Origin: Schmidtea polychroa
Lineage: Eukaryota
Assembly (NCBI GenBank): GCA_044892525.1
Contig: CM097887.1
Span: 88,390,397 to 88,454,396 of the forward strand
Reading direction: 5' to 3'
Length of the DNA stretch: 64,000 nucleotides
The translations under genes were made by a program, and so were the position numbers. Numbering within the stretch: position 1 is the first letter of the stretch; every line of letters starts with the position of its first letter. The notes beneath the pieces were generated by a model. The model ran no database searches. It saw only the letters and a program-made list of their open reading frames with translations, and had not been told where the DNA came from. Below, in pieces: positions 12,671 to 52,700 of the stretch.

Positions 12671-15600
12671 TTATTGCAAGGATCTCTCTAAAGCTTTCTG
12701 TAATGCTGTTTGCTCTTCTTTTGACAGGGTATTAATACAACTGGTAAAGCAATCTCGATTGACCTAAAGAATACCAAGATAATTGTCGCAATAATGAAAT
12801 TAACATTTTATAAACAAAATAAAAAGCAAAATGAGAACTCACCTGGACCATTTTGACTAAATTCATACACCGCCTAAAAGTTGGATGTTCCTCAGGCATT
12901 CCTTCCCTCATTAGACAATATGCAATTGATCGGATCACATGTGGTAAGTTATTACTGATGACCATGTTATTGGTTTCCGCTAAGTCGCACAGAAACCCGA
13001 AAACGTGAGGAGTCTCCTCACTGTCTTCCCATATCGGTAACCAGCTCAACCAAGTGGGCAGAAAAGCCCCTAAATCACCATTGGGAACACATTCTGGTCG
13101 ATATTTACAAATTTTCGATAATGCACTGATTGCATTTTCGGTGCTCGTGTTGAGCTCGTCATCTCTTGAACATGAAGCTTCAACAAGTTCAACGAGAACC
13201 GGCGCAGCCTCTCTCAGTACTTCGATGAATTCAACACCACCATACATTGCCATCAATCCAAACCCATAAATGGCAGCCTGGCGGATTTCCTTGCGTTCGT
13301 GCCTGAGACCATTGACCAATGCAGGCAAATAGTGTTGACAATACTGCCAACTGATCGATCCAACACTTTCAATCATGTCGTCCCAGAAACAGATGCAATA
13401 CTGGAAATCGGTCCATGGGCGGTCATTTTCCTGTAGTTTCATAACATTCGGGAGTAACTGGTCGAAAACTGGCAAAGCGTCCTCTTTGTACACCAGGAAC
13501 AGCGCGTGCATCAAATCCACTAACTTACACAGTACGTTGTCATCTTCATCCTTATCATTTTCCAGTTGTTCTTCGTCTTCCTCGTCGTATTCATCCGATT
13601 TTCTTTTCTCGGCTCTCGCGTCTTGATTCTTAAACATTTCCTCAAACTGTCCATTCATTATCCCAATCAATATTTCCATTCGTTCCCGACTGATCGATTC
13701 TCTACCCATTTTTTTGATACCTTCAGCAATCGCATCCATCATTTCAGCGATTTGAGCTTTATACGGTTCATCGGGGATTGCAATCAACAGGGCTGCAATC
13801 ATTCGATCCCAAAGAGCATTTGTCACGTTGGCACCCAACGGCCGACTACAGTCAATCAAAAACGGGATAATATCTGCAGCACTGCTTCGCACTTCCTCAT
13901 TGAAATAGAATTTCAGCAAAGGAATCATGATATCGGCGACCTGTAGCACATAGGGACAGAATGCATCCGACAACTCTCTGGCATAGCATACCAACATCTG
14001 GCAAGCAGTTGCTTTGTCTTCGAGTCCGCTTGTGTGGATCGCAAAATTCTGATCGTCAGCAATCTTAACGACTTGCCAATCTTTATCGATTTCTTCTGCT
14101 TCTTCGTTGTACATCATGCAGACATCCGGTCGAATGCTTGCGGTTTTCAGGACCGATTTCATGACGAGTGGAAGAAACTCAGCAAATGATTTACCGAGCA
14201 ATTTACACATCCGAGCCCAAGCACTAATCATGTAAGAGTGTTGTGGATCATCGGCGGGATTCGAGTTGTCATCGGTATCGTCATCGGTAGCGGTTTGTGA
14301 TTTCAACAGTAGCTGCATAACGTCTTGTGCGTCTGACATGAATCGATCCCGGCCGACAGCCAATCCCATCAATGAAATGCACTCGATAGTTTTCCCGCGT
14401 AACAAACGCAAATGTTCAGCATTGCACTGTTCCATGAGAAATTTGAGAAATTGCATGAATCCATCATAATAGGAAACAAAATTTTCCCCAACCGAATCGG
14501 CCACCGCGGCAATAGTTGTGACGATTTGTTCCAATACAAGTTTTCGGCCGCTCTGTACGAGTTCGTTGTATTTTTTCTGTAAAACAAGCAGCAACTTTTC
14601 AGTGAGCGCTGGCAAATAGTGGAGAATGACAGATTTCGGTGACGATTCACAGAAATTAACCATAGCTGCTCCAGCGTATGCTTGAACTCTGGGAAATTGA
14701 TCGTTATCTAATACCGATAACAAAGCCGGCACGATTTTCCCGTGATATGATTTCTGTAATTTGTGCCCGAAATCTGTCGACAACTGTCCGACAGCATTGC
14801 AAGCAGCATATCTCACCCGAGGATGCTCATCAGACAACAGTGGCACAATTTCATCGATAATTGATCCAAGAATTTCTTCCATTACTTTATTTAATCCTTC
14901 TGCACAAGATGAAATCGCCATCAATCCACCGTGACGATCTTTCCAATTGGCTGAAAGATGGATAATTGCAAATTTTCAAAGGCATTTCTGGCACTTACCA
15001 CTATGAAGCATAGCGGGAACCGTGCGAGTTATTTCATTCAATACCTTTCTACCTCGCATAGCGCATGCAATTCTATCCAGAGACATCTCAGCGATTATAC
15101 TCGGTGATGAATCATCTTCCTCCTCTTCAATATCCATTGTGGCCCATTCAGGATCGTCGTCAAGGTCTGTCAGCATCTAGTTGTATGGGAAAATTATCCA
15201 ATTTTCATAAAACTTATTTCAACAACTTTAAATAATATTTGAATAAATCCTTGCATATGGTTCGAGTACTTTCTAACAACTCCTGGACAATTTTCAGTCA
15301 ACGATACAAACACTTCAACCGCAAGATGCTTCTGTGATTCATCTACATTGACATTATGCAATATCTGAAAAATACAATATTGAAAAAATCAATAAATGTG
15401 CAACAGAGATAAAAATCTTTTATCGGTATTTATTACTATTTAAAGATAAATATCTATTATTTGTGTTGTCGATCTTAATAAAGATAAGACGAATGATTAT
15501 TTATCATTTTCGTAAATCTACTGACAAAATATTCAGTAGAATAATAACATAAAAATTTGTATTCAAAAGAAATTATGCAATGATCTATTAAATGAAACTA

Positions 15601-23540: not shown

Positions 23541-25214
23541 TGAGTATAAAAGCGACCGGCAAGTAAACAGAATTGCCAGTAGGTCGAAGAAACGTAAAGA
23601 AATAATCTAACGAGAGGAAGCAAAGGAAATTTGAACTTAGTAATAACTATATAGTTTTGAATCGAGCGTATCAGAATGAGGCATCTCCCGTCAAAAGATT
23701 AATCTCAGCGCAAGGTTCAGATTAATATTGAAAGGTGCAGATCAAAAGAGTTACTTAAAGTTATGGTTGTTTCATTAAAGAGTGTAATCGATAAAAGTGT
23801 AATTGTATTAGTCTCAAATAAAGATTATTGTGTGGGATTGTCTAACTTAATTTCAAAAAGGACGCAAAAGAGTCAGACCGGGATACAGACTTGAACAAAA
23901 TACCCAACAAAGGTATTGTATACAGCTATTATACAGTATAATTACGAATTTCAGGTTATTTATGATTTAATTTCAAAAAGTATAGATTTATTAATTTTCT
24001 TTCTAAATGCAAATAATTTCGGGAAACCTTTCTTATGTGATCGTAATAAATTCCTCCTTGTTCTATGATTTTGATAAATCTTTTTAATTAATTTTTAAAA
24101 ATCTAAAAATATTTAACCTTAAACTTATTATTTCCATTATACGTTACGTTTTTTGAATGCTTTTTGGTAATCTATCCTTATTTCTCGAATTTCTAAAAAT
24201 TTTTAAATTACAATGAATATGAATAGATAATAATTTACTGATGTTCATATTTATTCCCCCCCCCCCCCTACTCGCGAAAAGGTGAAATGTGATAAAGCGC
24301 TTGAAATATCCTGAAATTGCACATTTTTTATAAATAACAACGCTAGCAATAAATTATTATACCAGAAAATTTTGTTCACCTGTGTGTATTTTTTGTATAG
24401 GGTCGTTGTGTGTAGGGTATGTGTTTATATTTTATATTTCTCACCAAAATTATTTTTCTGCTTTTCTGCAGTAAATGTACTTCATTTATGCCGTTCGCTT
24501 ATAATTATTATTCATATTTCATGTAGGTATTTTTTTCGATATAGAAATTAATCGGGTTTTATAATACCTTAATTTGTGACTAAACGTACCATAATATTTG
24601 CGTTTTTGTATCCAGTGTAACTAGATTTTAAACACGCAGGTAAGTTGTTGTGTTGCCTAAATTATGAAATTTATTGATTGTTTTTAATTATAGAAAGTTT
24701 TATCTAAAATGTATACTGAGTGTACTACTTTCTTGATTTCTATAATAAAAGATGGTGTTCTTTGAAATAGCAAATATCAACACACAGGTAAGTTGGTCTG
24801 TTTATATAAAATAAAGTTATTGATATTATTGTTATATTATAGGTGATATTATCCCATGAAACCGAGGTATATTTTAAGGACATAAATACAAATTATTACA
24901 GCCTTTCTGTGAAATATATTTGTTATATACATTTTAAAAACAATGACTATTTTCAAAGATGTTTCATTCTTAATTTTCCATGTTTTGACAAATTTTAAAG
25001 TAATACTCATTTAATAAATAATCATTCTTAAATTATATTTTATTAAAAATCTTCAAACTCTAATTATTTTAATCTTAATTAAATATGCCATTGTATTTTC
25101 TAATGTAATTAACCGTAAAATATTAATTGTTTGTTTGTTTTCTATAGAATTCCCTACCGTTGGACCTAGGGTGCTGAAATTTTGCATGTGCCCCTCATTT
25201 GACTCGGGACAGGT

Positions 25215-26306
25215 TGTTGTGGTTGGCGTAGTCCTTTCTGGTGATTTGGCAATAGAATCATTTCTTTGACCATTATTCGAGAAAACGCTAAATAATTCTT
25301 CAGTTTTCTTTTTTTCTGGCTGATATAATGATGGATTTTCGCAATGAATTATTTTACAATGGGTAGTATTGAACAAAACCGCGTCACATTGTTTGTAGTC
25401 ACAACAATATTTAATACATTCGTCCCACTCATCTAGCATGATTATCTTTTGTATGATATTAGTTTTATTAACAAGACCAAATGGAAAGTGATTCAATAAC
25501 ACGATTTGTGAATACCTATCATCAGATGAATTAATATTCTTACATACTTCCTCCTTGTTCGAGGTTATGAAATTTAACAATATCAGTAATGTAAATAATT
25601 TTAAAATCATTTGAGAAGAAAAGTAATTAAATTCAATTTAAAGTCAGACAATTTATATAATAAATTCGATTTACACAATTTTTATTTAAATTACAATTTT
25701 CACTTATTTAAGTAAAACAAAAATATATTATAGAAACTATATAAAAAATGTAAATATAATCAGACCAGATAAACATATTCAACAGCCATTTCTCATTTAC
25801 AAAATGTTAACTAAATATAAATTGTCCATGAACCATTTTGACCATTGTCATTCGCATACAATATTTGAGGAAATGTATATCCTTTGCCGTTCTGATCCTT
25901 TTTTGCATTATCACATTGATCAGAATTTGTAAAGACGTGTGGTGGTTTGATAAAAAGATCTTTTCGGGTTCATATTATTGTTAGGATTTGTTCCGTATTT
26001 CGCGAATTGTAATGGATGAGGGTGTTGGTCTATGAGAGCCAACACTAAAACTATTGGGAGCCGAATACAGTTTATCTTGATAATGATAACATGGCATCGA
26101 ATTTGCTTTACTCGTCTGAGATTGATTAATAGAGCCTGATTGATAAGTAGAAGTATTAGCTGATCGCACGACTTTTGATTGACTATACTTGTGTTCTGTT
26201 TGGTCCTTATTCGTTGGTGACCGCGCATTTATATATAATATAATATAATATAATATAGTATAATAGGTATATAGATATTGTTAAGGCCGTGTAACGGCTC
26301 ACTACA
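25215..26306 (-). repeat. LTR copy (1092 bp), itself flanked by CAGGT on both sides
   Basis: Near-identical to 32585-33723 apart from about 5 substitutions and a 47-bp deletion. Confidence 0.9.
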
Positions 26307-26671
26307 CAGGTCATAGGCTATGTTTCACCCCCAGGTTACCCCTCCCCCCCCCCTAGGGTACCCTTAGTCGGTTTTTTTGTCTGTCCGGTCAGCAATTTAC
26401 CATATAAATAATAATTTATTATATGCTTGCTACTTGCAGTTGAAATAAATATAATTTAGTCAAAAGTTTTCAAAGCAGAATTCAAACATGGAGAATTTGA
26501 ATATTATTTGATTAGTGAACCAGTTTGCAATTGGAAAAATATTGCCAGTTATTTTTCGATTTAAATTGGAGTGCGTTTTCGATTTTACAAGTAGTGACAA
26601 TTTATCAAAGGTGGATAGTGTCTAAAAAGGAAATCGGCGATTGATGAATTAATTGATCACATGGAATAAAG

Positions 26672-29600
26672 TTAAGTGAATTTCAGCATCAGATGTGTCA
26701 AATTTTCATTGGAATAGACTCTGGCAAGTCTTGGAGGTTTGGAAATGTCTTCACCAATTTGGCGCACCCAAATCTTATCACTATGTTTCACATTTTTCGC
26801 GGTTCGCTGCTTGTCGGGTTTCGAAACTATTGAGCGAAGATTTAGTAGATTTGTTGTTGCTGGATGTGTATTCTCTGTAGCTAACTTTTCATCGCGTTGG
26901 TAGTTTGTGATCAAGGTACGCGCGATTTCGTTTGAGTCTGTGGCAGGTTCTACTGAAGGGTTTCCGTTCGACGTAGTTGGAATGGGTTCGACTGAGACTT
27001 TCTCTAAATCAGAGTGAAGTTTGTCTTCGTCCACGTCATCAGAAATCATGAAATTTATATTTTGGGTAACACCGTTAATAACGATGTGAGCATTGTTATC
27101 CTTAATGTCGATCAATTTGTAAGGCCCCGAATATCTCGGTTTGAGACCTGAATCCGTAATATTACGAAGATAAACGTGAGTTGCGTCCTTGAAGAACTTT
27201 GGGACGTACGGTGTGTATGAGGAAGCATACGAAAACTGTGGGTTGCTATCGATCGAAAGAAAATGATCTCTAGCCATATCTAATTCCTCAAAGGTAGGAG
27301 CGTTATCGAAATCAACTAATTCGTTAGGTAACGATGTTGAAGAACCGAAAAGTAACTGTGCCGGTGTAGTTCCGGTAGTCCTGGAGGGCGTGTTACGCCA
27401 ACCAAGAAGGACAAAAGGTAAAGCTTTAGTCCAATTAAGTCTCGATGAAAGTATTCCAAGAGAAGTCTTCAAAGTACGGTGAAATCTTTCGATCATGCCG
27501 TTTGTCTGAGGATGGTAAGCAGTTGAACGGAGGTGTTGTATACCGAGCTTTTCAGTTAGTTGTTGAAATAACTGGGATTCAAACTGAGATCCCCTTTCTG
27601 TGATTATTGATTTCGGAACACCGTATCTAGAAATCCAATGTTGCAAAATTGAATTTGCTACAATTTCAGCAGAAATGTTTTTTAGAGGAATAACTTCAAA
27701 CCAACGCGTTTTCCGGTCAATCATGGTTAATAAGTAAGAAAAACCGCGATCAGAAGGCAAGGTCGATGTGAAGAATTTCGAACCTATTTCCGGTCGGATA
27801 GTGAATCATCTGTGGATTAGTGTGTCTAGTGATCTTGTGTTGTTGACAACCGATGCACTGACTCACCCACAATTTCATATCGTGCCTCATTGCTGGCCAA
27901 ACCACATGTGAATGCAATAGGTTGAAGGTAGCCGACGAACCTGGATGATGTAAGTCGTGAATGGAGTGGAAAGCTAATTTCCGTAAGGAATCGTGCAAAA
28001 TCGGTCTTAAAACACCTGATAAAGACGAGTCAAAGTGTACTCCGTCCACGATTTCAAGCTTATCGCCAAAAGCAGCTAGATCTTTTGCCGAAGGTGGATT
28101 GTCGCGGAGGCACTGTACTGGAAATATCGGATCGTGCAATATAACGTTGGTGCTGCGGGAAAGACAGTCTGCAATAACGTTTTCTTTGCCGGCAATGTGG
28201 CGTATTTCGCAAGAAAATTCTGAAATATAACTGATTTGCCTCTGTTGTCGTGGAGATGGGTCTTTCATTCCAAAAAGATAAGTTAGCGGTTTGTGGTCAG
28301 TGTAGATGACAAAAGGACGACCTTCAAGCAAGTGCTTGAAATGTTTGATTGAAAGATATATGCCTAAGAGTTCTCGGTCGAAAGCCGAATATTTCCGTTG
28401 TGCGGAAGAAAGTTTCTTTGAGAAAAACTCTAAGGGTTCAGAAATGTCATTATGTAATTGGTGTAATACTGCACCAATAGCAACGTTTGATGCATCAGTG
28501 GTCAGACTCCAAGGTAAATCAGCATTGGGAAAATGGAGTGTTTGAATTTTCGAAAGTGCCGACTTAGCGTTTTCAAATGCACTGAGTGTGGTATCGCTCC
28601 ATGACACTAAAGACTTTTTTGGTTTTGAAACAAGACCTGAAAGAGGTGACAAAATGTCAGAAACCCCTGGAATAAAACGATGACAATAGTTTATCGTTCC
28701 CAAAAAACTTCTCAGTTGTGAAACTGTTTTTGGAAGTGGGAATTTGGCTATGGTATCTAGTCTATCCGGAGGAGGTCGGATTCCATCTCCGGAAATTAAA
28801 TGTCCCAGAAAACGAGTCTCGTGTTGGAAGAAGGTACACTTATCAACGTTTACCTTAAGGTTGTATTGCCGAAGTGCTGTTAAAGTTCTTGTCAGATGGG
28901 TTATATGCGTCTCTAAATCAGGTGATCCGATTAAAATGTCGTCTATGTAAGGAACTGCGAAAGGCAGGTCCATTAAGACTTGATCAATATACCTTTGAAA
29001 GGTCTGTGCAGAATTACGAAGGCCAAATGGCATATGCACGTACTCGAAAAGTCCGATCGGAGTTATTACGGCTGTTTTTTCTATGTCAGACTCTCGCACG
29101 GGTATCTGATGGTACGCCTTCACGAGGTCGATTGTGGAGAAAATCTTGCCTTTGAAAGACGGTGAAGGATATCACTAACAAGCGGCATGCTATAGGAATC
29201 ATGTACCGTAATAGCATTAAGGTTTCGATAGTCGCCACACGGACAGAAAGTGCCATCTTTTTTTGGGACCAGGTGCAATGGCGATGACCATGGAGATTTA
29301 GATCTCCGAATGGTACCCTCATGTAAGAGGTTAGTGAACTCGGAACGTACAAATTCGAGTTTTTCATTCGACAGTGGTCTAATTTTGCATCTAATTGGTA
29401 AAGATGAAGTTGTGTCGATCGTGTGGCAGTAAAGCGGCTTCGAAACGTCACTTATTGGCGTGTTAAAACACCTATTAATAATATCTAAGGCTATTTTTGG
29501 GTGTTCGATTGTTATAACCGTTTTCGACGGAGTAGTATATATATCGTCCGTTCCTATCCGTTGTGGATCTTCAAAGATGTTTGAGGGAATAGTGCTGCAG

Positions 29601-30004
29601 TTTAATTGGTTATTTATCCTTAAAGTGCGTCCACGGCAATCTACGAGTAGTTCGTTAGCGCTTAAAAAATCAGATCCTAATATGGGGATAATAACCTCTG
29701 CTATATAAAATTTCCACTCAAATAATTGGTCGGACAGAAATGGCAACGAGAAAGCAATTGTCTTTGAATCTAAAGTCTCAACAACACTACCGTTTGCGGC
29801 CTTCAAAGAAATATCGACAGTGTTGAGGTCTGGAAGGTACTCTTTAGGTAAGATCGACAAGCTGGAACCAGTGTCGACAAGGAATTTTAGTCTGTTGGAA
29901 GGAGACGACAATATATTAAAAGCGTTTGACTCTGCTTCTATTAAAAATAAATCTGATTTTGATGAAATTTTGCCTCCCACCTCTGCCGCTAGAAGTGGTG
30001 GCAT
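26672..30004 (-). pseudogene. pol: Pol (protease, RT, RNase H, integrase) broken by two frameshifts (~29130, ~27755)
   Basis: FLVDTGSS; KAYHQIP; YIDD; TTDASNVAIGA; FDRELL; YTDHKPL; IN core TMIDRKTRW...ERGSQF...MIERFHRTLK; GPY motif PRYSGPY. Confidence 0.93.
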
Positions 30005-30066
30005 TATAAGTTTTTTTGATTGTTTGCTTTAGGTTTTGTGTAATTGGAGCAGCCTTCGAAGCATTT

Positions 30067-32244
30067 TTAGGCTTTATCTCCAAACCTGTCGTGGTATATA
30101 CACTTGTCAAGTATCTGACAGGATGGTGCTTTGTCTCGCCAATTGCAACCTAGATGGCAGAACCGTGCCTTGTTACGAAACTTAAAATGGAAACGGCACA
30201 GGTTCCTGGTTGCAGGTGAACGTTGACGAGTATTTTGCACAAAGTGTGATTTTTGGGCATATTGCCTGTCGTCATTTGTCCGCCTGGTGGACATGCTATT
30301 CTCAAGCTCGCTGATGCGTTTATTGAGGCCTGTAATAGCGCAAAGTAAGGCTTCTTCGGTCGAAGGTTTTAAAGAAGAAGAAGAAGGTAAAATTTCGGGG
30401 TTAGTGCTGCTACTTAACTGCACAGAGCAAGTTGGTTGCGGACCAAGTGGCACGACTTCGTTAATCTTGTCGGCCATCTTTGCTAGCTCTACCACGTCTG
30501 CTGTTGACGAAAGCGCTAAAATTTGTTGTGCGTGTGGCGGTAAAGCAGACAGAAAAAATTGCCTCAAGAGTTTTTGATCCGCCGCAGCCTCCGGATGTAT
30601 TTGCGTTAGTTCCGCCATGGCGTGTTGCAAGAACTGTGATGGTTTCCTGCTGCCCAAAGTTTGCGTCTTAAAGTATTTAGTGAAGACGGCAGCTGTAGGT
30701 TCCTTAAAAATATCGAGGATTGCCGTACGCAATTCTTCATATGGGTTTTTAACGCTAGTAGGCGAAGTGCGAAGGATCACGGACGAAAGTTTACTTAATA
30801 TCGTCGGCGGAATCAACGGCAAGATGCGACAGTATTTGTCTCGTGAACTGGTTACCTCGATTCCCTCGAGTGCTAGTTCGGTAGCTATCAGCCAAGTAAG
30901 TGGAGAGTTATTCTCATCCAAAAAATATTGACATAAGTACGTTGATCGCTGGTTGTTGGACCTACGTTTATGTTTTGCCTGTTTGGGGTTGCTGCCTGAG
31001 TCATTCTCCGAATCGGAGGAACCGCCAGAAAGTTGCAACAAACAATGAATGACGCTGTATGGTGTCACTCCATAGTCGCCCAAGGAACGACTGTCGGAAA
31101 GGATGTTGCCGTTATACGACAAGAGAAAACGGCATTTGTGATTAGTCAATATGCTGTAATTTTTAGAAAGACCTTTAATTGTAGTCTCTGTGTCAACTGA
31201 AACGGTTTGTGTCTTATTTGTTCCAGGGTTTTCTATTAATATTTGGAACTTTTTGGGCCCCGGTGCGGCGCTACCCTCTCGTGTGGGCTGATGCTTATTT
31301 AAATAATTTATTATAATTTTATATATGATATCAATAATAATATAAATCAATAATAATATAGTATAATTTAATAATAATATAATAATATAATTTAGAGGTA
31401 ATCGATCTAAGGTACCTGGCGGTGCTGACACGGGCATTGCTTGATTGAGTCTCGATTCGCTGGGAGACGGTTTATTATCGTGAATAAATGGCTGTCCCGG
31501 TGCACGAGAGTTTAATGTGAAAAAATCATTATTCTGTTGCATTAAGAATTCATTTGGATTTGGTCGAAGCATGATGCGTTGTGGGGCTGTGTATAAGACA
31601 TCACTCGTTAGCAATTTGTTATTTGGTATATAATTGTTGATCGGAGTCATTTTTTTACGATTTTCAACGGCAATCATCTCAGCCAATGCTTGCCGGGAAA
31701 CATTAATCGAATCAAAATCTATATCGGCTGTATCTTTATATTTCTGATCGTAATGTGAATTCGGTTTCTCCGAGCCAAATATGCGATTTATATCCATTTC
31801 GTTTCGATCCTGATACTGACCGTAGTTAAGCACACCGTTGTTGTTTGCCTGTTGATTGATGTTGTGATCGTATGACTGATTATTATTGTTGTTATTCTTG
31901 ATTGCGGCGTGGTTTTGAGAATTTAACTGGCAGAAACTTTCCAGCAGAGAATTCGACGAACCAACTGAATTCAAACTGTTCATAAATGATTTCTGATCTG
32001 AAAGCCGTGACAGGGGAGATGTGGAATTCAGTGTACTGTGGAATTCAGTAATATCATTACCAGCTGAGCTATTGAAAGCACTGAATAGGGGAAATTCGGA
32101 TTTAGTATCCGATGATTCAGATTGTAATTGAATACTTTTACTGATAAATTTGAAAGACGATTTATTTATCGGGTCAGCAATTTGAAATTGAACATTTGGA
32201 ATATGATTATTATCTGATATTTGCAGGGGTCGAAATGGAATCAC
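30067..32244 (-). CDS. gag: Extended Gag ORF: Ser/Asn-rich region - hydrophobic helix (31389-31300) - ubiquitin-like domain (31248-31021) - Gag with CHCC knuckle
   Basis: 725-codon open frame (GTG start as called by the ORF track); Gag motifs LGSRKPSQFL, FLSALP, LAKMADKI, CRFHFKFRNKARFCHLGC; UBL tail LSDSRSLGDYGVTPYSVIHCLLQLSGG. Confidence 0.85.
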   Translation of the reverse strand: MIPFRPLQISDNNHIPNVQFQIADPINKSSFKFISKSIQLQSESSDTKSEFPLFSAFNSSAGNDITEFHSTLNSTSPLSRLSDQKSFMNSLNSVGSSNSLLESFCQLNSQNHAAIKNNNNNNQSYDHNINQQANNNGVLNYGQYQDRNEMDINRIFGSEKPNSHYDQKYKDTADIDFDSINVSRQALAEMIAVENRKKMTPINNYIPNNKLLTSDVLYTAPQRIMLRPNPNEFLMQQNNDFFTLNSRAPGQPFIHDNKPSPSESRLNQAMPVSAPPGTLDRLPLNYIIILLLNYTILLLIYIIIDIIYKIIINYLNKHQPTREGSAAPGPKKFQILIENPGTNKTQTVSVDTETTIKGLSKNYSILTNHKCRFLLSYNGNILSDSRSLGDYGVTPYSVIHCLLQLSGGSSDSENDSGSNPKQAKHKRRSNNQRSTYLCQYFLDENNSPLTWLIATELALEGIEVTSSRDKYCRILPLIPPTILSKLSSVILRTSPTSVKNPYEELRTAILDIFKEPTAAVFTKYFKTQTLGSRKPSQFLQHAMAELTQIHPEAAADQKLLRQFFLSALPPHAQQILALSSTADVVELAKMADKINEVVPLGPQPTCSVQLSSSTNPEILPSSSSLKPSTEEALLCAITGLNKRISELENSMSTRRTNDDRQYAQKSHFVQNTRQRSPATRNLCRFHFKFRNKARFCHLGCNWRDKAPSCQILDKCIYHDRFGDKA

Positions 32245-32980
32245 ATAGAACGACTACGGGATCCAAAAAATCACGATCTGGAATTGTCTGAATTAATTTG
32301 ATATACTCTTCTCGATTCGATGACAAACAGGAATGAGCAATTATCAAATGATCTATCAGCCTATCAATATCATGGGATATAGGATTAAATTTTGATGAAA
32401 GTTTTAATTCAGGAAATATTTTGGAAAGCGTATGGAACATATTTTGACGTAATTCCGCTGTTCGTTTATGAGAAACTAACATAGATTGTATTTCCTGTAA
32501 TCTGGATTTAGCAATGATATTAGCCGCTAAATAAGTTTCTAAATGTTCAAATCTTGAACATTGTTCTGGCACTTCTGACACCAATGTTGTGGTTGGCGTA
32601 GTCCTTTCTGGTGATTTGGCAATAGAATCATTTCTTTGACCATTATTCGAGAAAACGCTAAATAATTCTTCAGTTTTCTTTTTTTCTGGCTGACATAATG
32701 ATGGATTTTCGCAATGAATTATTTTACAATGGGTAGTATTGAACAAAACCGCGTCACATTGTTTGTAGTCACAACAATATTTAATACATTCGTCCCACTC
32801 ATCTAGCATGATTATCTTTTGTATGATATTAGTTTTATTAACAAGACCAAATGGAAAGTGATTCAATAACACGATTTGTGAATACCTATCATCAGATGAA
32901 TTAATATCCTTACATACTTCCTCCTTGTTCGAGGTTATGAAATTTAACAATATCAGTAATGTAAATAATTTTAAAATCAT
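32210..32980 (-). CDS. Secreted MANEC/MANSC-domain protein starting within the LTR
   Basis: Signal peptide MILKLFTLLILLNFITS; Cys pattern C...C-x3-CC-x4-C-x9-C-x4-C-x5-C; Thr-rich RTTPTTT; frame continues through the LTR end and PBS. Confidence 0.8.
   Translation of the reverse strand: MILKLFTLLILLNFITSNKEEVCKDINSSDDRYSQIVLLNHFPFGLVNKTNIIQKIIMLDEWDECIKYCCDYKQCDAVLFNTTHCKIIHCENPSLCQPEKKKTEELFSVFSNNGQRNDSIAKSPERTTPTTTLVSEVPEQCSRFEHLETYLAANIIAKSRLQEIQSMLVSHKRTAELRQNMFHTLSKIFPELKLSSKFNPISHDIDRLIDHLIIAHSCLSSNREEYIKLIQTIPDRDFLDPVVVLCDSISTPANIR
32570..32583 (-). promoter_or_regulatory. Primer-binding site, tRNA-Leu type
   Basis: TGGTGTCAGAAGTG one base after the LTR-terminal CA; complementary to the ...CACTTCTGACACCA 3' end typical of tRNA-Leu. 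Confidence 0.8.
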
Positions 32981-33723
32981 TTGAGAAGAAAAGTAATGAA
33001 ATTCAATTTAAAGTCAGACAATTTATATAATAAATTCGATTTACACAATTTTTATTTAAATTACAATTTTCACTTATTTAAGTAAAACAAAAATATATTA
33101 TAGAAACTATATAAAAAATGTAAATATAATCAGACCAGATAAACATATTCAACAGCCATTTCTCATTTACAAAATGTTAACTAAATATAATAATTTCATA
33201 TAGTCCGATTATTTCTAAAGATTTTACAGCCTGCCGATTTGTCCATGAACCATTTTGACCATTGTCATTCGCATACAATATTTGAGGAAATGTATATCCT
33301 TTGCCGTTCTGATCCTTTTTTGCATTATCATATTGATCAGAATTTGTAAAGACGTGTGGTGGTTTGATAAAAAGATCTTTTCGGGTTCATATTATTGTTA
33401 GGATTTGTTCCGTATTTCGCGAATTGTAATGGATGAGGGTGTTGGTCTATGAGAGCCAACACTAAAACTATTGGGAGCCAAATACAGTTTATCTTGATAA
33501 TGATAACATGGCATCGAATTTGCTTTACTCGTCTGAGATTGATTAATAGAGCCTGATTGATAAGTAGAAGTATTAGCTGATCGCACGACTTTTGATTGAC
33601 TATACTTGTGTTCTGTTTGGTCCTTATTCGTTGGTGACCGCGCATTTATATATAATATAATATAATATAATATAGTATAATAGGTATATAGATATTGTTA
33701 AGGCCGTGTAACGGCTCACTACA
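32585..33723 (-). repeat. 5' LTR (1139 bp)
   Basis: TG...CA termini, followed by PBS, outer CAGGT TSD; AATAAA on minus strand at 33056-33051. Confidence 0.92.
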
Positions 33724-34505
33724 CAGGTCATAGGCTATGTTTCACCCCCAGGTTACCCCTCCCCCCCCTAGGGTACCCTTAGTCGGTTTTTTTGTCTGTC
33801 CGGTCAGCAATTTACCATATAAATAATAATTTATTATATGCTTGCTACTTGCAGTTGAAATAAATATAATTTAGTCAAAAGTTTTCAAAGCAGAATTCAA
33901 ACATGGAGAATTTGAATATTATTTGATTAGTGAACCAGTTTGCAATTGGAAAAATATTGCCAGTTATTTTTCGATTTAAATTGGAGTGCGTTTTCGATTT
34001 TACAAATTGAAATTTATTTTGAAAGCTTTTCTTATTGTGAATTAAACATGGAATTGAAGCTGTTATAAAATTAATACTGAAACGTAATAACATCATTAAA
34101 CAAAAAATTAATTTAAAAGAATTATTATAATAAATGTAAACTCAGGCGAAGCCGGGTACAACAGCTAGTATATTATAAATAAATAAATCGATCCCTAAAT
34201 TGTTTAGTAAAGGTTAAATATGAAGGAAATTTGTTAATTTCAAAAGATTCTAAATCTCAAACGGTTTGACTGGCTACTTTTATATAAACAATTTATAATA
34301 AACAAAACGTTAACACTTTGCATCATTTAGAAAATATAATTTTTATGTTCAAATTCTGTTTACTAAATATTTATATTGTGACATCCTGTCTTCGATCAAA
34401 CTTCAGCTTATTGCATAGGTTATATAAATGGTATTTTTCTCATAAATTTAAGTACAAAGTGGTGACCATCGTCCGATCTAGCAACCGACCTTCAAAACAA
34501 ATCGA

Positions 34506-46700: not shown

Positions 46701-49700
46701 CAGTAAAAATAAAATTTACTGAACTTCTTACTATTTTAGCTAAATACTATTTATAAAACTAAGCAATAAAGAACAAGTCATAGCACGTTAACAATCGCCG
46801 GCTCACTTTCAAAAATAATCTCATGACTCATGAGACCAGAGTTACCAACTTAACAGAGATACTTTTGAAATAAATCTCATAGTCTGGCAACCTATCACAA
46901 GTCTATGCAGAGGGCTCGACTATGTTGGTACGAAATATTTGAGTAGAATTACACACTGGTCTTAGTGACATTTTTATAGTCAATTTCCTGTTGATTTTTA
47001 TAAATTATTAGTAATTAGACCGATTTTAAATAAAAAATTAATTTTATAACAAATCGCTTTACGTGCTTAGTGATTCGGCTTCGCGTTCCAAGTTTGGCAC
47101 ACGTGCCTTAGGTTGCCAATCCCTGATTTAGACAATGCCTACTGAATGAATTCAAGAAAGATAATAACAATTTTATTGGCATCTACAGGGCCACGTGGAT
47201 CAGTTTCGAATAATAACAGTTTGTCCATTTCAATATCATGAGATAATGCCATCCTTGAACGAAATTGAATGAAATCAGGATATGGAATATAATTTTTATT
47301 GTAATATGATAGCGCTATCATTGAACAACCTAATGATCGCATCTCCGCCGATTGGGTATAGAGCTTATTAATATCCGCGATAGAACGACATATTATGTCA
47401 CAAGGCATTTTATATCCAATTTTAGATTTAAATCGAGCTGCTTCCACTTGTGCACGACATACGTGAGATCGACAATCAGGGATCATACCAGTCATAACAC
47501 CTCCAGTACTTTCAGTAATATTAAACAATCTTGTAGCTGAACTCTTCTCAATCATTTTATCTGGAACCTTTCTTTGTGTAGCTACTACACCATAATTATT
47601 GCCTCGAATACCAACGGAAAGCAATCCATCTAATGCCATTGCCTTAAATGCATATTCGACTTGGAATAATCTCTTTTCAGTTGTCAGAACAATCTTCGCT
47701 TCCATATTTCCGATTTAAAAAATCCACAATTCCAGAATTCGAAAATTTACCCGTAAAACAAAACGACAAATAATTTTTCTCGCGTCTGTGTGCGCACACC
47801 AACAATACTCGATCAAATAATACTGCGCACACAGACGCGATACAGAAGACTCCAAACAACTGCCAGTCCAGAGGCAATCCCCCTCTGATTGGTCGAAACA
47901 CCTACAGTTACTAGTAAATGCATACATTAAATAAATCATTCAGGCAAAGTATACAAATTGAAAGGCAATAGGAAAAAAATGATCTTACATTAAAAACAAT
48001 ATACTTCGTAATTCTAAATGTCACTCTAGTATATCATATTGTAATAAATAATTTTTTGTAAGACTTTTATTTTAATTGTTTCTTAATGATTTCACATCGT
48101 CAGTTAACAGCATTTACGATTGCAAAACTTGTAACATTAAAGTTATTAAATCAATATTTAAACGATATAATATGCATTCTGTTGCTACTTTGTATGCATT
48201 TACTAGTGATTGTATACTTTAACTGAATTTAAAACTTTAACTGTAACATAACTACTAAATAACTTCTAAATTTAAAATTATATCTCAATCAACATTAAAA
48301 CCATAAAAAACAAATGGCATTTAATTCGTCCTTGATCTTTCATGGGATCCAAACCAATAGAAAATTTAAAAGTTTTAAAATGAAGAAATTTAAACATTTG
48401 TTGGGTTAATAATTAGTAAGTTAGTTAATTTCTGACTCCTCGTATTCCCTTTTATAAATATATTGACTAAGACCAAATACAGAACAAATTTATTGACTCT
48501 AAATATAATTTACAAAATCGTCACAATGTTTGATCTCTTCATTCAATACAAATTTTTACACTTTAGGCATAAAACCGAATGAATAATCTATTTTATGGAT
48601 ACATCTATTTTAGTGAAGAACTCGAATACAATTATTTTTGCCTCCTCCACTGTTTTTATCTTTTTGACACTAACTTTATTTTTGATTTCTTCTACCAACT
48701 GGAAATTCATCTTTTTTCAACTCTCGTCTTATACTGTTGAATAAATGATGATTTGATTGATATCGGCCGAATTTTCCCGAATTTTGAGCCTGATTGTTAT
48801 AATAATAAATTAATTCGTCCGTCTTTTCACTTTACACCTGAGCGGTTTTATCAACAATTATTATGGTGACTATTCAGGGTTTCTACATAGTTGGGCTCTT
48901 TAAACCGTGGGTGAAATACCTGTTGATTTAAATTATTTAATCATTGTACATATTTTACATAAAATATTATTTAGATCTATATTACTTAGCGTTTATAACA
49001 TATCTATACAAGTTATACATGCTACTCTTAACCAATATTATATTTTTACGCTCAGTATTCAAGAAGATGCATATTTATTAGCAGAGGACAGTCAAGGTTT
49101 ATTCATGAATTCTTTTACTTACACCTAATCTAAATACTTTAAAATATTGGCAATTAGAATGTTAAATTCTTTTATTTTTTGTTTATATTGAAAGAATTTC
49201 TAAATTTGACACTTTTAATGATGATCCCTTTTTCTAGATTTTGCTTGGAAATAGTACAAAAACTCGAAATGATTTGCAAACAATGATTTTAATAACCGAT
49301 GAACAAATTTCGAGAGACAAAAAATTTAAATATTCTGATGTCATAAAAGCATTGAAAAAGTCGAATATTATCCTTCATGTATTCTCCTTCAATAACAAAT
49401 CGGATTCGACTCTAAGGAAATTAGCCAATAGTTCAGATGGAAGTTATGCAAGATTATTAGGAAACTTTTCGTTTGATAAAATCTTTATGAAATTGTTACT
49501 GAAAAATAAAACAAAAAACTTGAATAAGGTAAGTCTTGTATATTACTTAAATAATTATCTGATCCCATTTACAAATTTCTAGTCACCTTTTATCAAATTT
49601 AAGTAATTTGCTTTCGATAGTTTTGTATATTTAATATACGACTGGGCTTCCTACTCCAAAAGTTTCATCATGTACTTTGCGTTTCACAGTTAAACTATTC

Positions 49701-52700
49701 CTCTTTATACATTTTTTAGCGAGCTAGCCCTCAAAATACATAATATTGTAAGCCTTTAAATAATTGGATAAATTCAGTTATCAAAGAAGATTTAAAAAAC
49801 TGACTTTCTCAAACCGGAAAATATGACACATCCTCTCACGTATTGCATCATCTATCAATCTAAGTACATTTATTATCTATACATTAATCTATTTATTATT
49901 TGTGTTAAAATACTCACGCATGAAATACAGCATATAGCAGTACCACATTTAAACGAAATAAAGCAAATTCATACATTCAAATGTGTAGAACTATTATATA
50001 TATAATAGTAACTTTCTTTCAATAATAAATTAGCCGCTGTACTGAAGAATAAGAAATATAGTTTTCAACCTCTAACTAGAATGCTTTAATCTTATTCACT
50101 TCTTTTTTCATAGAACCCACCCTNNNNNNNNNNNNNNNNNNNNNNNNNNNNNNNNNNNNNNNNNNNNNNNNNNNNNNNNNNNNNNNNNNNNNNNNNNNNN
50201 NNNNNNNNNNNNNNNNNNNNNNNNNNNNNNNNNNNNNNNNNNNNNNNNNNNNNNNNNNNNNNNNNNNNNNNNNNNNNNNNNNNNNNNNNNNNNNNNNNNN
50301 NNNNNNNNNNNNNNNNNNNNNNNNNNNNNNNNNNNNNNNNNNTAATATTGTATTTTCTGAAGATATTTACTTTAATCTTTATTAAGAAAATTGAGTTATT
50401 GCTCAATGATAAATTATACAAATACTCTTATAATGTGACTTACCAAAATAATCTTACAACTGTCAATGTAAATATAAAAAAGAAAATAAGAAAGTATATG
50501 GTAAAAATGTCCAATAAATCAGGATTAGATATATTACCAGTATCAACAAATCTTATCAACAAAGAAACACAGTTAGTGTTTGAAATANNNNNNNNNNNNN
50601 NNNNNNNNNNNNNNNNNNNNNNNNNNNNNNNNNNNNNNNNNNNNNNNNNNNNNNNNNNNNNNNNNNNNNNNNNNNNNNNNNNNNNNNNNNNNNNNNNNNN
50701 NNNNNNNNNNNNNNNNNNNNNNNNNNNNNNNNNNNNNNNNNNNNNNNNNNNNNNNNNNNNNNNNNNNNNNNNNNNNNNNNNNNNNNNNCAAAGATTAAAA
50801 ACCCCAATCCAAGTAATTATATAAAATTTATAGTTCCGATGTTAAAGATCAAGTTTATAGCAGCTTTATTTGTTGAATTTATGTATATTTCATTTGCTAA
50901 ATATTCATATGAAGTTAAATCTAGTTTATTTTATAATATATCACTAAATAAATGTGAGGAAGATTTAATTATTAGCACAATATAATATTATAATAATAAA
51001 TTACATCTGAATTATTACTATTAAGAAATTAACATATACATATATTAAAGTATTATATTCGTATTATATTATGGCGTACATAATTATTATTGTTATTTAG
51101 AAATGCTTAATCGTCAATTTAATGATTTGTTTAGTCAAACCGATATTGTTATAATTTTTTGAATATAATTTGAATTCGACTTCTAGTTTTATTTAACATG
51201 GCGACCCTGGCAATAGTGAATAAGATGATTCCGGATGTTTACGACGGAAGACACGAAATCGAAACTTTCATTGAAGAATGTAAGCGATATTTTCAGTTAT
51301 GTGGGTTAGATCAAGATAACCAAAATATGATGATAAAATGCCTTATTTCAAGAGATATTTTACCGATTTATGAAGCCGTCGATGTCAAATTTATTAATTT
51401 TGAAGATAGACTCAGAGAAGCTTTCAAGAAGCCGTCAACACTGATAGGCGATTTTCTGAACTTATACAATTATGAGAAAGATAACGATGCAGCGCCAGTG
51501 TTTTTCGAAAAGATTGAGAAAATGGTCGACAAAGTATTGAAACACAAGTGGGATAAAAACGAATTAGTCGCTTATTTTTTGATACATTGTGTCAAAGACA
51601 AAGAAATCCAAAAAGAGATCAAGATGCGAGATGCTTTAAAAGTCGAAGAGATCAAGGACGTAATTCGTAAAGTTGATGCTATCAACATTGAAGTTTCTAG
51701 TATTGCAGTTATGCAAAGAAAAGAAACGTTCGCAAACGTAATAAAGAAACGACAAGGATTTGCCGATATACAAGATCGACAACGCAATTTTTCGAATGTT
51801 CAAGAAAGACGAAATTTTGAACCAAGATTCAATTCTATTCCGCACGCTCAAAGCTTCGATTCTGGAAGGAATACTAATCAACAGTATTACCATAGAGACA
51901 ACAGAGCAAGTGGAAGTCGCGTTGTTACATGTTGGAATTGTCAAGAACTAGGACATTCGAGTCGAGAATGCCCAAAAAAGAAGTGTTATGGATGTGGAAA
52001 AGAAGGACACATGATTAGAGAATGTAAAAATAACAAGATAAATTCAGAATTGAGATGCAACGCTTGTAAGGAATCTGGCCATCACCGGGGAGAATGTCCA
52101 TCGATTTCATGCTCAGGATGTGGAAAACGTGGTCATTTGCGGTTTCAATGTTGGGGAACAGCAGACACACGATCATCAGGAAGAAACCAATCTAGAAATT
52201 ACGAGGATAACAGACGATATCAAGACAGATATGCCGATGGAAGAGTGGCAGCTATGGAAGACCGCGGAAACGAAGCGGAGGATTCTCAGTCTACCCGAAG
52301 TGATGGACACCCAAATGGGAGGGCTCCGTCATTAGGCGAGATGATAGGAGCCATGCATTAAAAGGTAATAATGATGATTGTGTGCGCCAAGATAAGTATA
52401 GTATATTTTTTAATAATAATAGTAATAGTAATTTAGACAGTATGTATAATTTTAAAAGTAGTAATAATAATTTAGACAGTATATCTAAATCAAATTTAAA
52501 GGTAAAAAATATTAGATTTAAATCAGATGTAATTTTAGAAGATAGTATTAAAAACGTGAAAAGTAAATTAAAAAAATATGATGTAATAAAGGAAGATAAT
52601 CAGAGTAACAGTAAGATTATATATGACGTAAGAGATAAAACTGATATTAATGATTGTAATTGGATGCGTGATAAAATTAATGTAATTGAAAATAAATGTG

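What the first reader, a model, noticed from the sequence alone, without database searches (positions are those of the whole stretch)
31021..31248. 76-aa ubiquitin-like domain with intact di-glycine fused to the Gag N-terminus
Seen: FQILIENPGTNKTQTVSVDTETTIKGLSKNYSILTNHKCRFLLSYNGNILSDSRSLGDYGVTPYSVIHCLLQLSGG is exactly 76 residues. From position 50 it aligns without gaps to ubiquitin (L50, D52, R54, L56, D58, Y59, S65, H68, L71, L73, G75, G76 identical). It is in frame with CHCC-type Gag and is followed by an acidic Ser linker. I44, K48, K63, R72 and R74 equivalents are changed. Established: Ub/UBL fusions such as UBA52, RPS27A and FAU are cleaved after GG. Inference: a captured processing tag, folding chaperone, N-end-rule switch or ESCRT/proteasome handle for Gag.
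Basis: partly seen in the sequence, partly recalled or inferred. Interest (0 to 1): 0.88.

Follow-up and report, generated by a model that had tools for sequence, protein, structure and literature searches.

The report
Ubiquitin-like tag fused to retrotransposon Gag
A jumping gene of the retrovirus-like kind carries a ubiquitin-like domain ending in Gly-Gly directly in front of its capsid protein, and about three dozen related elements keep the same Gly-Gly, so the host's own ubiquitin-cutting enzymes probably trim the capsid protein free.

Summary
It lies on the minus strand.

- **Domain:** window 31021-31248 encodes a 76-residue ubiquitin-fold domain. It scores 38.7 bits against Pfam PF00240 (cut-off 25.4). 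The AlphaFold model has pLDDT about 90 and matches ubiquitin/ISG15 with TM about 0.9.
- **Context:** the domain ends in Gly-Gly and is in frame with a short acidic linker and a CHCC-type Gag. It sits inside an LTR retrotransposon, 25215-34004.
- **Not a one-off:** in 36 related Gag proteins from metagenome assemblies, both glycines are invariant (37/37 with the window). Position 73 is Leu in 31/37 and no Pro follows the GG. The ubiquitin Ile44 patch and Lys48/Lys63 are not kept.
- **Not an N-terminal domain:** no member has a start Met at the domain. Translation must begin upstream, in the LTR or at the primer-binding site, and pass through a variable leader. Several leaders carry fragments of host genes.
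- **Best explanation (inferred, not shown):** a captured ubiquitin serves as a processing signal. Host deubiquitinases cut after GG and free Gag from the leader.
- **State of this copy:** it is defective, with one premature stop in gag and two frameshifts in pol.
- **Literature:** I found no description of this architecture in the papers I could search.

The parts
32585..34004 (-). 5' LTR (1420 nt), TG...CA termini
   Evidence: About 99% identical to 25215-26589, with one 48-nt indel. It ends 1 nt before the primer-binding site.
32572..32583 (-). Primer-binding site, 12-mer TGGTGTCAGAAG
   Evidence: Lies directly after the 5' LTR. The same 12-mer sits upstream of the UBL-Gag gene in sister loci L002, L003, L004, L006 and L007.
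31249..32980 (-). Leader: coding-like sequence from an ATG inside the 5' LTR, through the PBS, up to the UBL. It is read in two frames in this copy.
   Evidence: An ORF of about 250 codons starts at 32980. The UBL-Gag frame is open for more than 330 codons upstream of the UBL. The two are in different frames. GC is 36% against 25-27% in the flanks.
32663..32827 (-). KIAA0319_N / MANEC-like domain encoded inside the LTR, after a hydrophobic N-terminus that looks like a signal peptide
   Evidence: PF23597 scores 32.9 bits against a cut-off of 27. The same ORF start is present in the 3' LTR at 98% identity.
31435..31539 (-). Leader segment 89% identical (31/35 aa) to an unrelated S/N-rich protein fragment (P0163), which then continues differently
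31294..31395 (-). Very AT-rich stretch (about 13% GC) kept open in frame. It translates to an I/L/Y/N-rich hydrophobic segment.
   Evidence: Kyte-Doolittle 19-residue mean is 2.67. Comparable I/L/F-rich stretches lie upstream of the UBL in many relatives.
31021..31248 (-). Ubiquitin-like domain (the finding), 76 aa
31021..31026 (-). Gly-Gly codons at the UBL/Gag junction
   Evidence: Invariant in 37/37 aligned family members.
30937..31020 (-). Acidic/Ser-rich then basic linker (28 aa), predicted disordered
   Evidence: pLDDT is 50-66 in the alignment-based model. Coordinates.
30022..30936 (-). Gag core (DUF7041-type, helical), with the CHCC box and a second Cys/His motif. Broken: one premature stop.
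   Evidence: PF23055 hit. Helical model with pLDDT above 90.
30145..30198 (-). CHCC box, CX2HX9CX3C
   Evidence: The motif definition is from PMC2582038.
26672..30025 (-). pol (protease, RT, RNase H, integrase). Broken: two frameshifts, no in-frame stop.
   Evidence: Pfam RVP, RVT_1, RT_RNaseH, Integrase_H2C2 and rve. tblastn with four intact relatives gives 3 segments, 2 frame changes and 0 stops.
25215..26589 (-). 3' LTR (1375 nt)

Best explanation
The 76-residue domain is a diverged ubiquitin, about 31% identical to ubiquitin. An ancestor of a subclade of CHCC-Gag (CsRn1-like) Ty3/gypsy retrotransposons captured it, and it is kept as a host-operated cleavage signal.

In these elements the first reading frame does not start at Gag. 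It starts upstream, in the U5 end of the LTR or at an ATG overlapping the primer-binding site. It then runs through a leader whose sequence varies freely between close relatives and sometimes contains pieces of host genes.

Host ubiquitin C-terminal hydrolases or USP-type deubiquitinases normally cut polyubiquitin and ubiquitin-ribosomal-protein precursors after Gly76. Here they would cut after the invariant Gly-Gly. That would release Gag, and Gag-Pol after the -1 frameshift, with a defined and mostly Ser/Ala/Gly/Thr/Met N-terminus. The leader-UBL piece would be discarded.

Shown: the fold, the in-frame position, the family-wide invariance of GG, the absence of a start Met, the variable leaders. 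Inferred: the cleavage itself, the enzyme, and the purpose.

The copy in the window is defective, so nothing is claimed about activity at this locus.
For: Fold and family: PF00240 at 38.7 bits. The AlphaFold2 model built from 37 sequences has pLDDT 89-96 over the domain and b-b-a-b-b-b topology. Foldseek matches ubiquitin and ISG15 C-domain at TM about 0.9 and rmsd 1.0-1.6 A.

The domain is part of the element. It lies between two 99%-identical LTRs, after a PBS, in frame with Gag.

Conservation in 37 sequences that share only 22-36% identity with the window: G75 and G76 in 37/37, L73 in 31/37 plus 4 Ile, position 72 Arg in 25/37, and the residue after GG never Pro.

No member has a Met at the first UBL residue (0/30). 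Every complete member has 14 to 871 in-frame residues upstream.

P0011 and P0012 have 94% identical Gag and 80% identical UBL, yet leaders of 871 and 820 aa show no detectable similarity.

A host fragment lies between PBS and UBL, so inside the element, in L007 (CNOT1 CAF1-binding domain). The window has the equivalent in its P0163-like segment.

P0021 carries a UBL 71% identical to a ubiquitin unit but nests among members whose UBL is at most 30% identical. This suggests repeated replacement by host ubiquitin.

The linker after GG is predicted disordered.

Precedent: captured cellular ubiquitin in cytopathogenic pestiviruses acts as a processing signal cut by cellular ubiquitin C-terminal hydrolases (PMC8310069). 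Such polyprotein fragments come up as structural matches.
Against: No cleavage has been observed. All support is comparative.

The Leu8-Ile44-His68-Val70 patch, which many deubiquitinases also contact (established knowledge), is not conserved. Position 44 is T/S/C in 26/37 and position 70 is N/H/S in 21/37.

The window's own tail has Gln72 and Ser74 instead of Arg.

Only 11 of 37 members still reach E<=0.01 against PF00240.

In locus L001 only the C-terminal half of the domain is left before GG, and a Met follows it. The module can therefore decay while Gag remains.

The relatives are contiguous ORFs called on metagenome contigs, and cluster representatives may be biased towards long ORFs.
Confidence: 0.6

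Rival explanations
1. The domain stays attached to Gag. It works as a docking handle for proteasome shuttle factors, ESCRT components or other ubiquitin-binding proteins, as the UBL domains of Rad23- or Ddi1-type proteins do.
For: Real beta-grasp fold directly on Gag. Retroviral Gag proteins are known to use ubiquitin in budding (general knowledge; reviewed in PMC10144533, seen).
Against: Non-cleaved UBL domains do not need a C-terminal Gly-Gly (established knowledge), yet here it is the only invariant feature. The Ile44 patch used by most ubiquitin-binding domains is not conserved. A Gag that stayed attached to the domain would also carry leaders of 14 to 871 unrelated residues.
Confidence: 0.12
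2. Cleavage happens, but the selected product is the released leader-UBL with a free Gly-Gly end. That product is conjugated to other proteins as a ubiquitin-like modifier.
For: GG is invariant and position 72 is Arg in 25/37. Arg72 matters for E1 recognition in ubiquitin (established knowledge; counts).
Against: The N-terminal leaders are long, unrelated and sometimes hydrophobic, which fits poorly with a modifier. Lys48 and Lys63 equivalents are not kept. The window has Gln72.
Confidence: 0.08
3. The domain mainly raises the yield or solubility of Gag, as ubiquitin does for the ribosomal proteins fused to it. Removal of the leader is a by-product.
For: This is the known behaviour of natural and engineered ubiquitin fusions (PMC9703124, listed). 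It is compatible with all the data above.
Against: It does not explain why the domain never carries the start codon, or why leaders are so variable. It is not exclusive of the best explanation.
Confidence: 0.1
4. It is a passenger: a recently captured or adjacent piece of a host ubiquitin gene with no role, or an artefact of reading through non-coding DNA.
For: This copy is defective. Host gene fragments do get into these leaders.
Against: The same architecture recurs in about 36 protein clusters that are only 22-36% identical to the window. The fold is predicted with high confidence from their covariation. The domain lies inside the LTR pair.
Confidence: 0.03

Closest known systems
Natural ubiquitin-fusion precursors (polyubiquitin, ubiquitin-eL40/UBA52, ubiquitin-eS31/RPS27A, FUBI-eS30/FAU)
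   Same: A ubiquitin-fold unit ending in Gly-Gly is joined in frame to an unrelated protein, with no Pro after GG. The tail residues are the best-conserved part.
   Different: Here the unit is internal: a leader precedes it and it has no start Met. It is only about 31% identical to ubiquitin and lacks the Ile44 patch and Lys48/Lys63. The downstream protein is a retrotransposon Gag. Cleavage has not been shown.
Captured cellular ubiquitin in cytopathogenic pestivirus polyproteins (PMC8310069)
   Same: A mobile or viral genome picked up host ubiquitin coding sequence, sometimes with neighbouring host fragments. It uses it as a processing signal cut by host hydrolases to create the N-terminus of the next protein. 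These polyproteins appear as structural matches.
   Different: Those are sporadic RNA-recombination events in individual virus strains. Here the module is fixed and old in a whole subclade of LTR retrotransposons, and it sits before Gag.
CsRn1-like clade of Ty3/gypsy LTR retrotransposons (CHCC Gag; PMC2582038)
   Same: CX2HX9CX3C Gag box, PR-RT-RH-INT order, DUF7041-type Gag.
   Different: The paper describing the clade does not mention ubiquitin (0 occurrences). More distant CHCC/DUF7041 Gag proteins in my search have no UBL. The UBL-bearing relatives also carry a second Cys/His motif after the CHCC box.
Ddi1/Ddi2 (UBL plus retropepsin-like protease)
   Same: A ubiquitin-like domain and a retroviral-type aspartic protease occur in one gene product.
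   Different: Ddi1 is a host gene. Its UBL is N-terminal, is not followed by Gag, and is not a Gly-Gly cleavage unit (from general knowledge, not tested here).
Yeast Ty1, whose Gag reading frame begins in the 5' LTR and contains the PBS
   Same: The first ORF starts in U5 or at the PBS, so the PBS is translated (L003: ATG 28 nt before the PBS).
   Different: Ty1 is a copia-type element without a UBL. This comparison is from general knowledge.

Membership tests
Ubiquitin family domain (Pfam PF00240, beta-grasp) | Profile score above the curated cut-off | tested here: met
   38.7 bits against 25.4, E=8e-10.
Ubiquitin family domain (Pfam PF00240, beta-grasp) | Beta-grasp fold | tested here: met
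   AlphaFold2 with a 37-sequence alignment gives pLDDT 89-96. Foldseek to ubiquitin/ISG15 gives TM about 0.9 and rmsd 1.0-1.6 A. The single-sequence model was uninformative.
Ubiquitin proper | Near-identity to ubiquitin, Ile44 patch, Lys48/Lys63, Arg72/Arg74 | tested here: not met
   31% identity to a ubiquitin unit. S44, N48, P63, Q72 and S74. It is a ubiquitin-like domain, not ubiquitin.
Cleavable ubiquitin-fusion precursor | C-terminal Gly-Gly directly followed in frame by another protein, no Pro at P1' | tested here: met
   GG in 37/37, Pro in 0/37.
Cleavable ubiquitin-fusion precursor | Ubiquitin unit carries the initiator Met (first unit) | tested here: not met
   0 of 30 members have Met at UBL residue 1. 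Leaders are 14-871 aa. In this respect it is comparable to the internal units of polyubiquitin.
Cleavable ubiquitin-fusion precursor | Actual cleavage by deubiquitinases | not testable with these tools
   No expression or proteomic data are available.
LTR retrotransposon, Ty3/gypsy | Two LTRs with TG...CA, a PBS next to the 5' LTR, gag then PR-RT-RH-INT | tested here: met
LTR retrotransposon, Ty3/gypsy | Target-site duplication and polypurine tract | tested here: not met
   The flanking 5-mers differ, and no purine run lies next to the 3' LTR. This may reflect recombination between copies.
CsRn1-like clade | Gag CHCC signature CX2HX9CX3C | tested here: met
   The box at 30145-30198 fits. Definition from PMC2582038.
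CsRn1-like clade | tRNA-Trp primer-binding site (PMC2582038) | not tested
   No tRNA gene is in the window, and no tool-supplied tRNA was available to compare. I make no assignment.
CsRn1-like clade | Placement in an RT/pol phylogeny with named clade members | not tested
   No named reference elements were available from the tools.

The most novel reading that the evidence does not exclude
The Gly-Gly ubiquitin module makes Gag expression indifferent to whatever is translated upstream. This has let the lineage repeatedly take up 5' pieces of host genes into its U5/leader region.

Fragments seen: a MANEC-like secretory N-terminus in both LTRs of the window, a Dis3/Rrp44 N-terminus plus a CNOT1 fragment, a cohesin SA fragment, histone H2A and a 5'-nucleotidase.

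The element would then behave like a natural 'leader, cleavage cassette, cargo' design. Some leaders, such as fragments of RNA-decay and chromatin factors, may themselves act on the host once released.
Probability: 0.25. Interest if true: 0.85.

Novelty: new variant of a known kind. Interest (0 to 1): 0.72.

Why it matters
LTR retrotransposons and retroviruses are thought to mature their Gag with their own aspartic protease. A whole subclade that outsources the first cut to the host ubiquitin system would be a new way for such elements to depend on, and be exposed to, host proteostasis.

It would also explain how these elements tolerate translated, rapidly changing leaders that start in the LTR and contain host gene pieces. 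That would offer a natural example of the ubiquitin-fusion trick used in protein engineering.

Practically, 'UBL + DUF7041 Gag' is an architecture that annotation pipelines could misread as a host ubiquitin-fusion gene.

Tried and rejected
- **Single-sequence structure prediction** gave mean pLDDT 48 and was useless.
- **Intron reading of the AT-rich stretch** before the UBL. It begins with GT and has AG ends, but neither candidate length is a multiple of three. Relatives keep equivalent stretches open in frame, and no tool predicts an intron. I treat it as translated and joined nothing.
- **dN/dS** between the two tandem copies in L003 had no power: 6 differences, all in the leader.
With P0012 it returned only contigs I already had in effect. 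L011 has no LTR pair.
- **Rfam and tRNA scans** of the window found nothing.
- **Source organism** could not be identified. All relatives come from unnamed metagenome or Logan contigs.
- **Gag sequence against PDB** gave no significant hit.
- **Eight literature searches** found no paper describing a UBL-Gag fusion in a retrotransposon. A ninth attempt was rejected for term syntax and never ran. The library lacks most subscription journals and Repbase reports, so this is absence of evidence only.
- **Host fragments upstream of the PBS** in L006 (H2A), P0028 (HSP90) and P0022 (Arp8). Whether they belong to the LTR or to flanking host DNA could not be decided, because those contigs lack a second LTR.
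Full report
**1. What is in the sequence**

The quoted 76 residues are the translation of the reverse complement of 31021-31248. The plus strand gives an unrelated, stop-containing frame.

The domain sits in a long minus-strand open frame. Downstream of it come:
- a 28-residue linker (acidic and Ser-rich, then basic);
- a DUF7041-type Gag;
- an 18-residue Cys/His box of the form CX2HX9CX3C.

Pfam's ubiquitin family model scores 38.7 bits (E=8e-10) against a curated cut-off of 25.4. phmmer against PDB sequences aligns it to ubiquitin.

A single-sequence AlphaFold2 run was uninformative. With an alignment of 37 family members the domain is modelled at pLDDT 89-96 with the ubiquitin strand-strand-helix-strand-strand-strand order. 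The linker is disordered and Gag is helical. Foldseek places the domain on ubiquitin and the ISG15 C-terminal domain, at TM about 0.9 and rmsd 1.0-1.6 A over 74-81 columns.

**2. The element around it**

- **LTRs.** Direct repeats at 25215-26589 and 32585-34004 are about 99% identical, apart from one 48-nt indel. They start with TG and end with CA.
- **PBS.** The 12-mer TGGTGTCAGAAG begins 1 nt after the 5' repeat. The same 12-mer precedes the homologous gene in five sister loci.
- **Genes.** Between the repeats lie gag and a protease-RT-RNase H-integrase pol.
- **Missing features.** There is no target-site duplication and no obvious polypurine tract.
- **Class.** This is a Ty3/gypsy-type LTR retrotransposon. 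The CX2HX9CX3C box is the signature that defines the CsRn1-like clade (PMC2582038).
- **Composition.** The interior is 36-46% GC, in a 25-30% GC host region.
- **Neighbours.** The window also holds importin-beta, cytochrome P450 and proteasome alpha exons. It contains a second, unrelated gypsy element with an ordinary CCHC zinc-knuckle Gag and no UBL.

This copy is defective. Compared with four intact relatives:
- gag carries one premature stop near its C-terminal end;
- pol carries two frameshifts and no in-frame stop;
- the gag-to-pol shift of -1 is shared with all relatives and is natural.

I give no positions for the defects.

**3. Is it a family feature?**

A HMMER scan of 1.84 billion representative proteins with the UBL+Gag stretch found 2624 hits.

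Among the 150 best, 136 are Gag relatives. Of these, 39 fit a loose pattern: an aliphatic, aromatic, Ala or Pro residue, then any residue, then GG, within 50 residues upstream of the Gag core. Two or three of the 39 look like chance, leaving about 36 real.

These include almost all hits with E below 1e-26. The called protein of the closest word-index hit (P0001) starts after the GG, but its DNA encodes the C-terminal half of the domain plus GG directly before the called Met.

The more distant CHCC/DUF7041 Gag proteins mostly begin within a few dozen residues of the Gag core and have no such unit. Ten with at least 80 residues upstream also lack it.

I aligned the window with 36 members that are 22-36% identical to it. 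Column counts are:

| Position | Counts |
|---|---|
| 75 and 76 | Gly 37/37 |
| 73 | Leu 31/37, Ile 4/37 |
| 72 | Arg 25/37 |
| 74 | Leu 11/37, Arg 11/37 |
| 44 | Thr, Ser or Cys 26/37; Ile 2/37 |
| 48 | Lys 10/37 |
| 68, 70 | variable |
| after GG | Ser 16, Ala 4, Asn 4, Met 4, Gly 3, Thr 2, one each of Lys, Val, Gln, Asp; Pro 0 |

Eleven of the 37 still match PF00240 at E<=0.01. Two of them, P0021 and P0045, match at about 1e-23.

**4. The domain is internal, and what precedes it is variable**

None of 30 members with sequence at that point has a Met at the first UBL residue. Leaders of 14 to 871 residues precede it in the same ORF. These ORFs were called on metagenome contigs and are contiguous.

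In L003, two tandem copies share a roughly 175-nt LTR. The ATG lies 28 nt upstream of the PBS. In several members an ATG overlaps the first bases of the PBS, so the protein begins or continues with the PBS translation.

In the window, an ORF of about 250 codons starts at 32980, inside the 5' LTR. It encodes a hydrophobic N-terminus that looks like a signal peptide (by eye) and a KIAA0319_N/MANEC-like domain (32.9 bits against 27), and it reads through the PBS. Its first 126 residues recur at 98% identity in the 3' LTR, so this coding fragment is part of the LTR.

The UBL-Gag frame is a different frame, and it is open for more than 330 codons upstream of the UBL. Whether the two were once one ORF cannot be told.

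Residues 236-270 of that leader are 89% identical to the start of an unrelated S/N-rich protein fragment (P0163), which then continues differently.

A 13%-GC stretch follows. It is kept open and translates into a strongly hydrophobic segment. Similar stretches precede the UBL in many relatives.

Other leaders contain recognisable pieces of host genes:

| Fragment | Member | Evidence |
|---|---|---|
| Histone H2A | P0017 | |
| Cohesin SCC3/SA HEAT repeats | P0012 | |
| Rrp44/Dis3 CSD1 and CNOT1 CAF1-binding domain | P0042 | |
| 5'-nucleotidase | P0014 | |
| HSP90 N-domain | P0028 | |
| Arp8 (weak, E=1e-3) | P0022 | |

In L007 the CNOT1 piece lies between PBS and UBL, so it is inside the element. 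The Dis3 piece ends about 100 nt before the PBS.

For H2A, HSP90 and Arp8 the fragments lie 240-340 nt upstream of the PBS. I cannot tell LTR from flank there.

P0011 and P0012 have 94% identical Gag and 80% identical UBL, but leaders with no detectable similarity.

**5. Most likely mechanism**

The conservation is concentrated in the C-terminal tail and the Gly-Gly. It is not on the surfaces that ubiquitin receptors read.

By established knowledge of ubiquitin precursors, a peptide bond after Gly76 is cut by deubiquitinases unless Pro follows. Non-cleaved UBL domains do not keep the GG.

The simplest reading is that the module is a host-cut processing signal. It frees Gag, and Gag-Pol, from a translated leader that the element cannot avoid, because its reading frame starts in U5 or at the PBS.

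The exposed residue is mostly one classed as stabilising by N-degron rules (30/37). A degradation switch is therefore not the conserved purpose.

The near-canonical ubiquitin of P0021 (71% identical to a ubiquitin unit) nests among members with very diverged units in a neighbour-joining tree of Gag. The tree has no support values. This suggests that the module has been refreshed from host ubiquitin at least once.

The closest precedent is the cellular ubiquitin captured by cytopathogenic pestiviruses. It acts as a processing signal cut by cellular ubiquitin C-terminal hydrolases (PMC8310069). Such polyprotein fragments and other viral ubiquitins are the structural matches in the viral structure library, and no retroviral Gag is among the 50 matches listed.

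Cleavage itself is inferred, not shown. The loss of the Ile44 patch is a point against easy recognition by general deubiquitinases.

**6. Novelty**

Eight full-text searches, plus reading of the CsRn1-clade, rotifer-LTR and giant-transposon papers, found no description of a ubiquitin-like domain fused to Gag of an LTR retrotransposon. The library is incomplete.

I rate it a new variant of known kinds: an LTR retrotransposon with an accessory domain, and a ubiquitin-fusion processing signal.

**7. Limits**

- The source organism is unknown.
- Relatives are unnamed metagenome or Logan contigs.
- Cluster representatives may favour long ORFs.
- The tree is unsupported by resampling.
- The signal-peptide and membrane-segment statements rest on hydropathy only.

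In my private working I recalled from memory the first residues of ubiquitin. While wondering which tRNA primes the element, I also recalled the 3' ends of a few tRNAs and one retroviral primer-binding site. I stopped, used none of these letters in any call or conclusion, and make no tRNA assignment.

In my working I also related ORF bounds printed by the ORF listing to where frames change. Those places are not repeated here.

Consensus lines printed by the alignment tool were not used.

Noticed in passing
window 32585-32980 and 25215-25610 (minus strand): Both LTRs contain the start of an ORF with a hydrophobic N-terminus and a KIAA0319_N/MANEC/PAN-like domain (PF23597, 32.9 bits). A host-like secretory N-terminus has therefore become part of the LTR next to the PBS. 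At 1.4 kb the LTR is far longer than the roughly 175-nt LTR of relative L003.
   Followed up: partly
window 31435-31539 (minus strand); P0163: 35 leader residues are 89% identical to the beginning of an unrelated S/N-rich protein fragment from a metagenome set, which then diverges. This looks like a captured piece of a host gene inside the element's leader.
   Followed up: partly
window 31290-31415 (minus strand); relatives P0009, P0011, P0012, P0019, P0021-P0024, P0028, P0045: An extremely AT- or T-rich stretch is kept free of stops just upstream of the UBL. It translates to an I/L/F/Y-rich hydrophobic segment (KD 2.67 in the window). It could be a membrane-like peptide, or an RNA/DNA-level element that merely has to stay open. 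This is unresolved.
   Followed up: partly
L007 258-3248 (P0042); L006 987-3092 (P0017); L008 228-4046 (P0012); L009 256-1860 (P0014); P0028; P0022: Leaders of related elements carry in-frame fragments of host genes: Dis3/Rrp44 plus CNOT1, histone H2A, cohesin SA, 5'-nucleotidase, HSP90 and Arp8. The CNOT1 piece lies between PBS and UBL. For several others, LTR and flanking DNA cannot be told apart.
   Followed up: partly
P0021 residues 179-250, P0045 residues 127-198: Two family members carry an almost canonical ubiquitin (PF00240 E about 1e-23; 71% identity to a polyubiquitin unit for P0021), although their Gag groups with members whose UBL is barely recognisable. This suggests replacement of the module by host ubiquitin.
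   Followed up: partly
window 32572-32583; L002 1044; L003 142 and 5218; L004 214; L006 1675; L007 1358: The 12-nt primer-binding site is identical across elements whose Gag is only about 30-40% identical. It is translated in any of the three frames in different members. In several an ATG overlaps its first bases.
   Followed up: partly
window 51198-55906 (plus strand): A second Ty3/gypsy element has two long open frames. Its Gag has classical CCHC zinc knuckles and no ubiquitin-like domain, and its pol is 25-36% identical to the first element's.
   Followed up: partly
window 34005-34040 and 25190-25214: There is no target-site duplication around the element, and no purine-rich tract next to the 3' LTR, despite 99% identical LTRs. 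A 48-nt indel (33191-33238) distinguishes the two LTRs.
   Followed up: no
window 30022-30145 (minus strand) and relatives: UBL-bearing relatives share a second Cys/His-rich motif downstream of the CHCC box. It is absent from the more distant CHCC Gag proteins in the hit list.
   Followed up: no
L003 1-10324: This contig holds two copies of a 5.08-kb element in tandem, sharing LTRs. Their leader-UBL-Gag ORFs differ at six nucleotide positions, all in the leader, and are both open; gag and pol are called as open ORFs in both copies.
   Followed up: partly
L002 9871-12567: A family-B DNA polymerase (DNA_pol_B_2) gene with a faint Endonuclease_7 hit lies next to a UBL-Gag element. It may be a Polinton/Maverick-like neighbour.
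   Followed up: no
window 12732-14924 (-), 6076-6714 (+), 47139-47705 (-): Host exons for importin-beta, a cytochrome P450 and a proteasome alpha subunit. Exons are long in a 25-30% GC genome. The organism was not identified.
   Followed up: no
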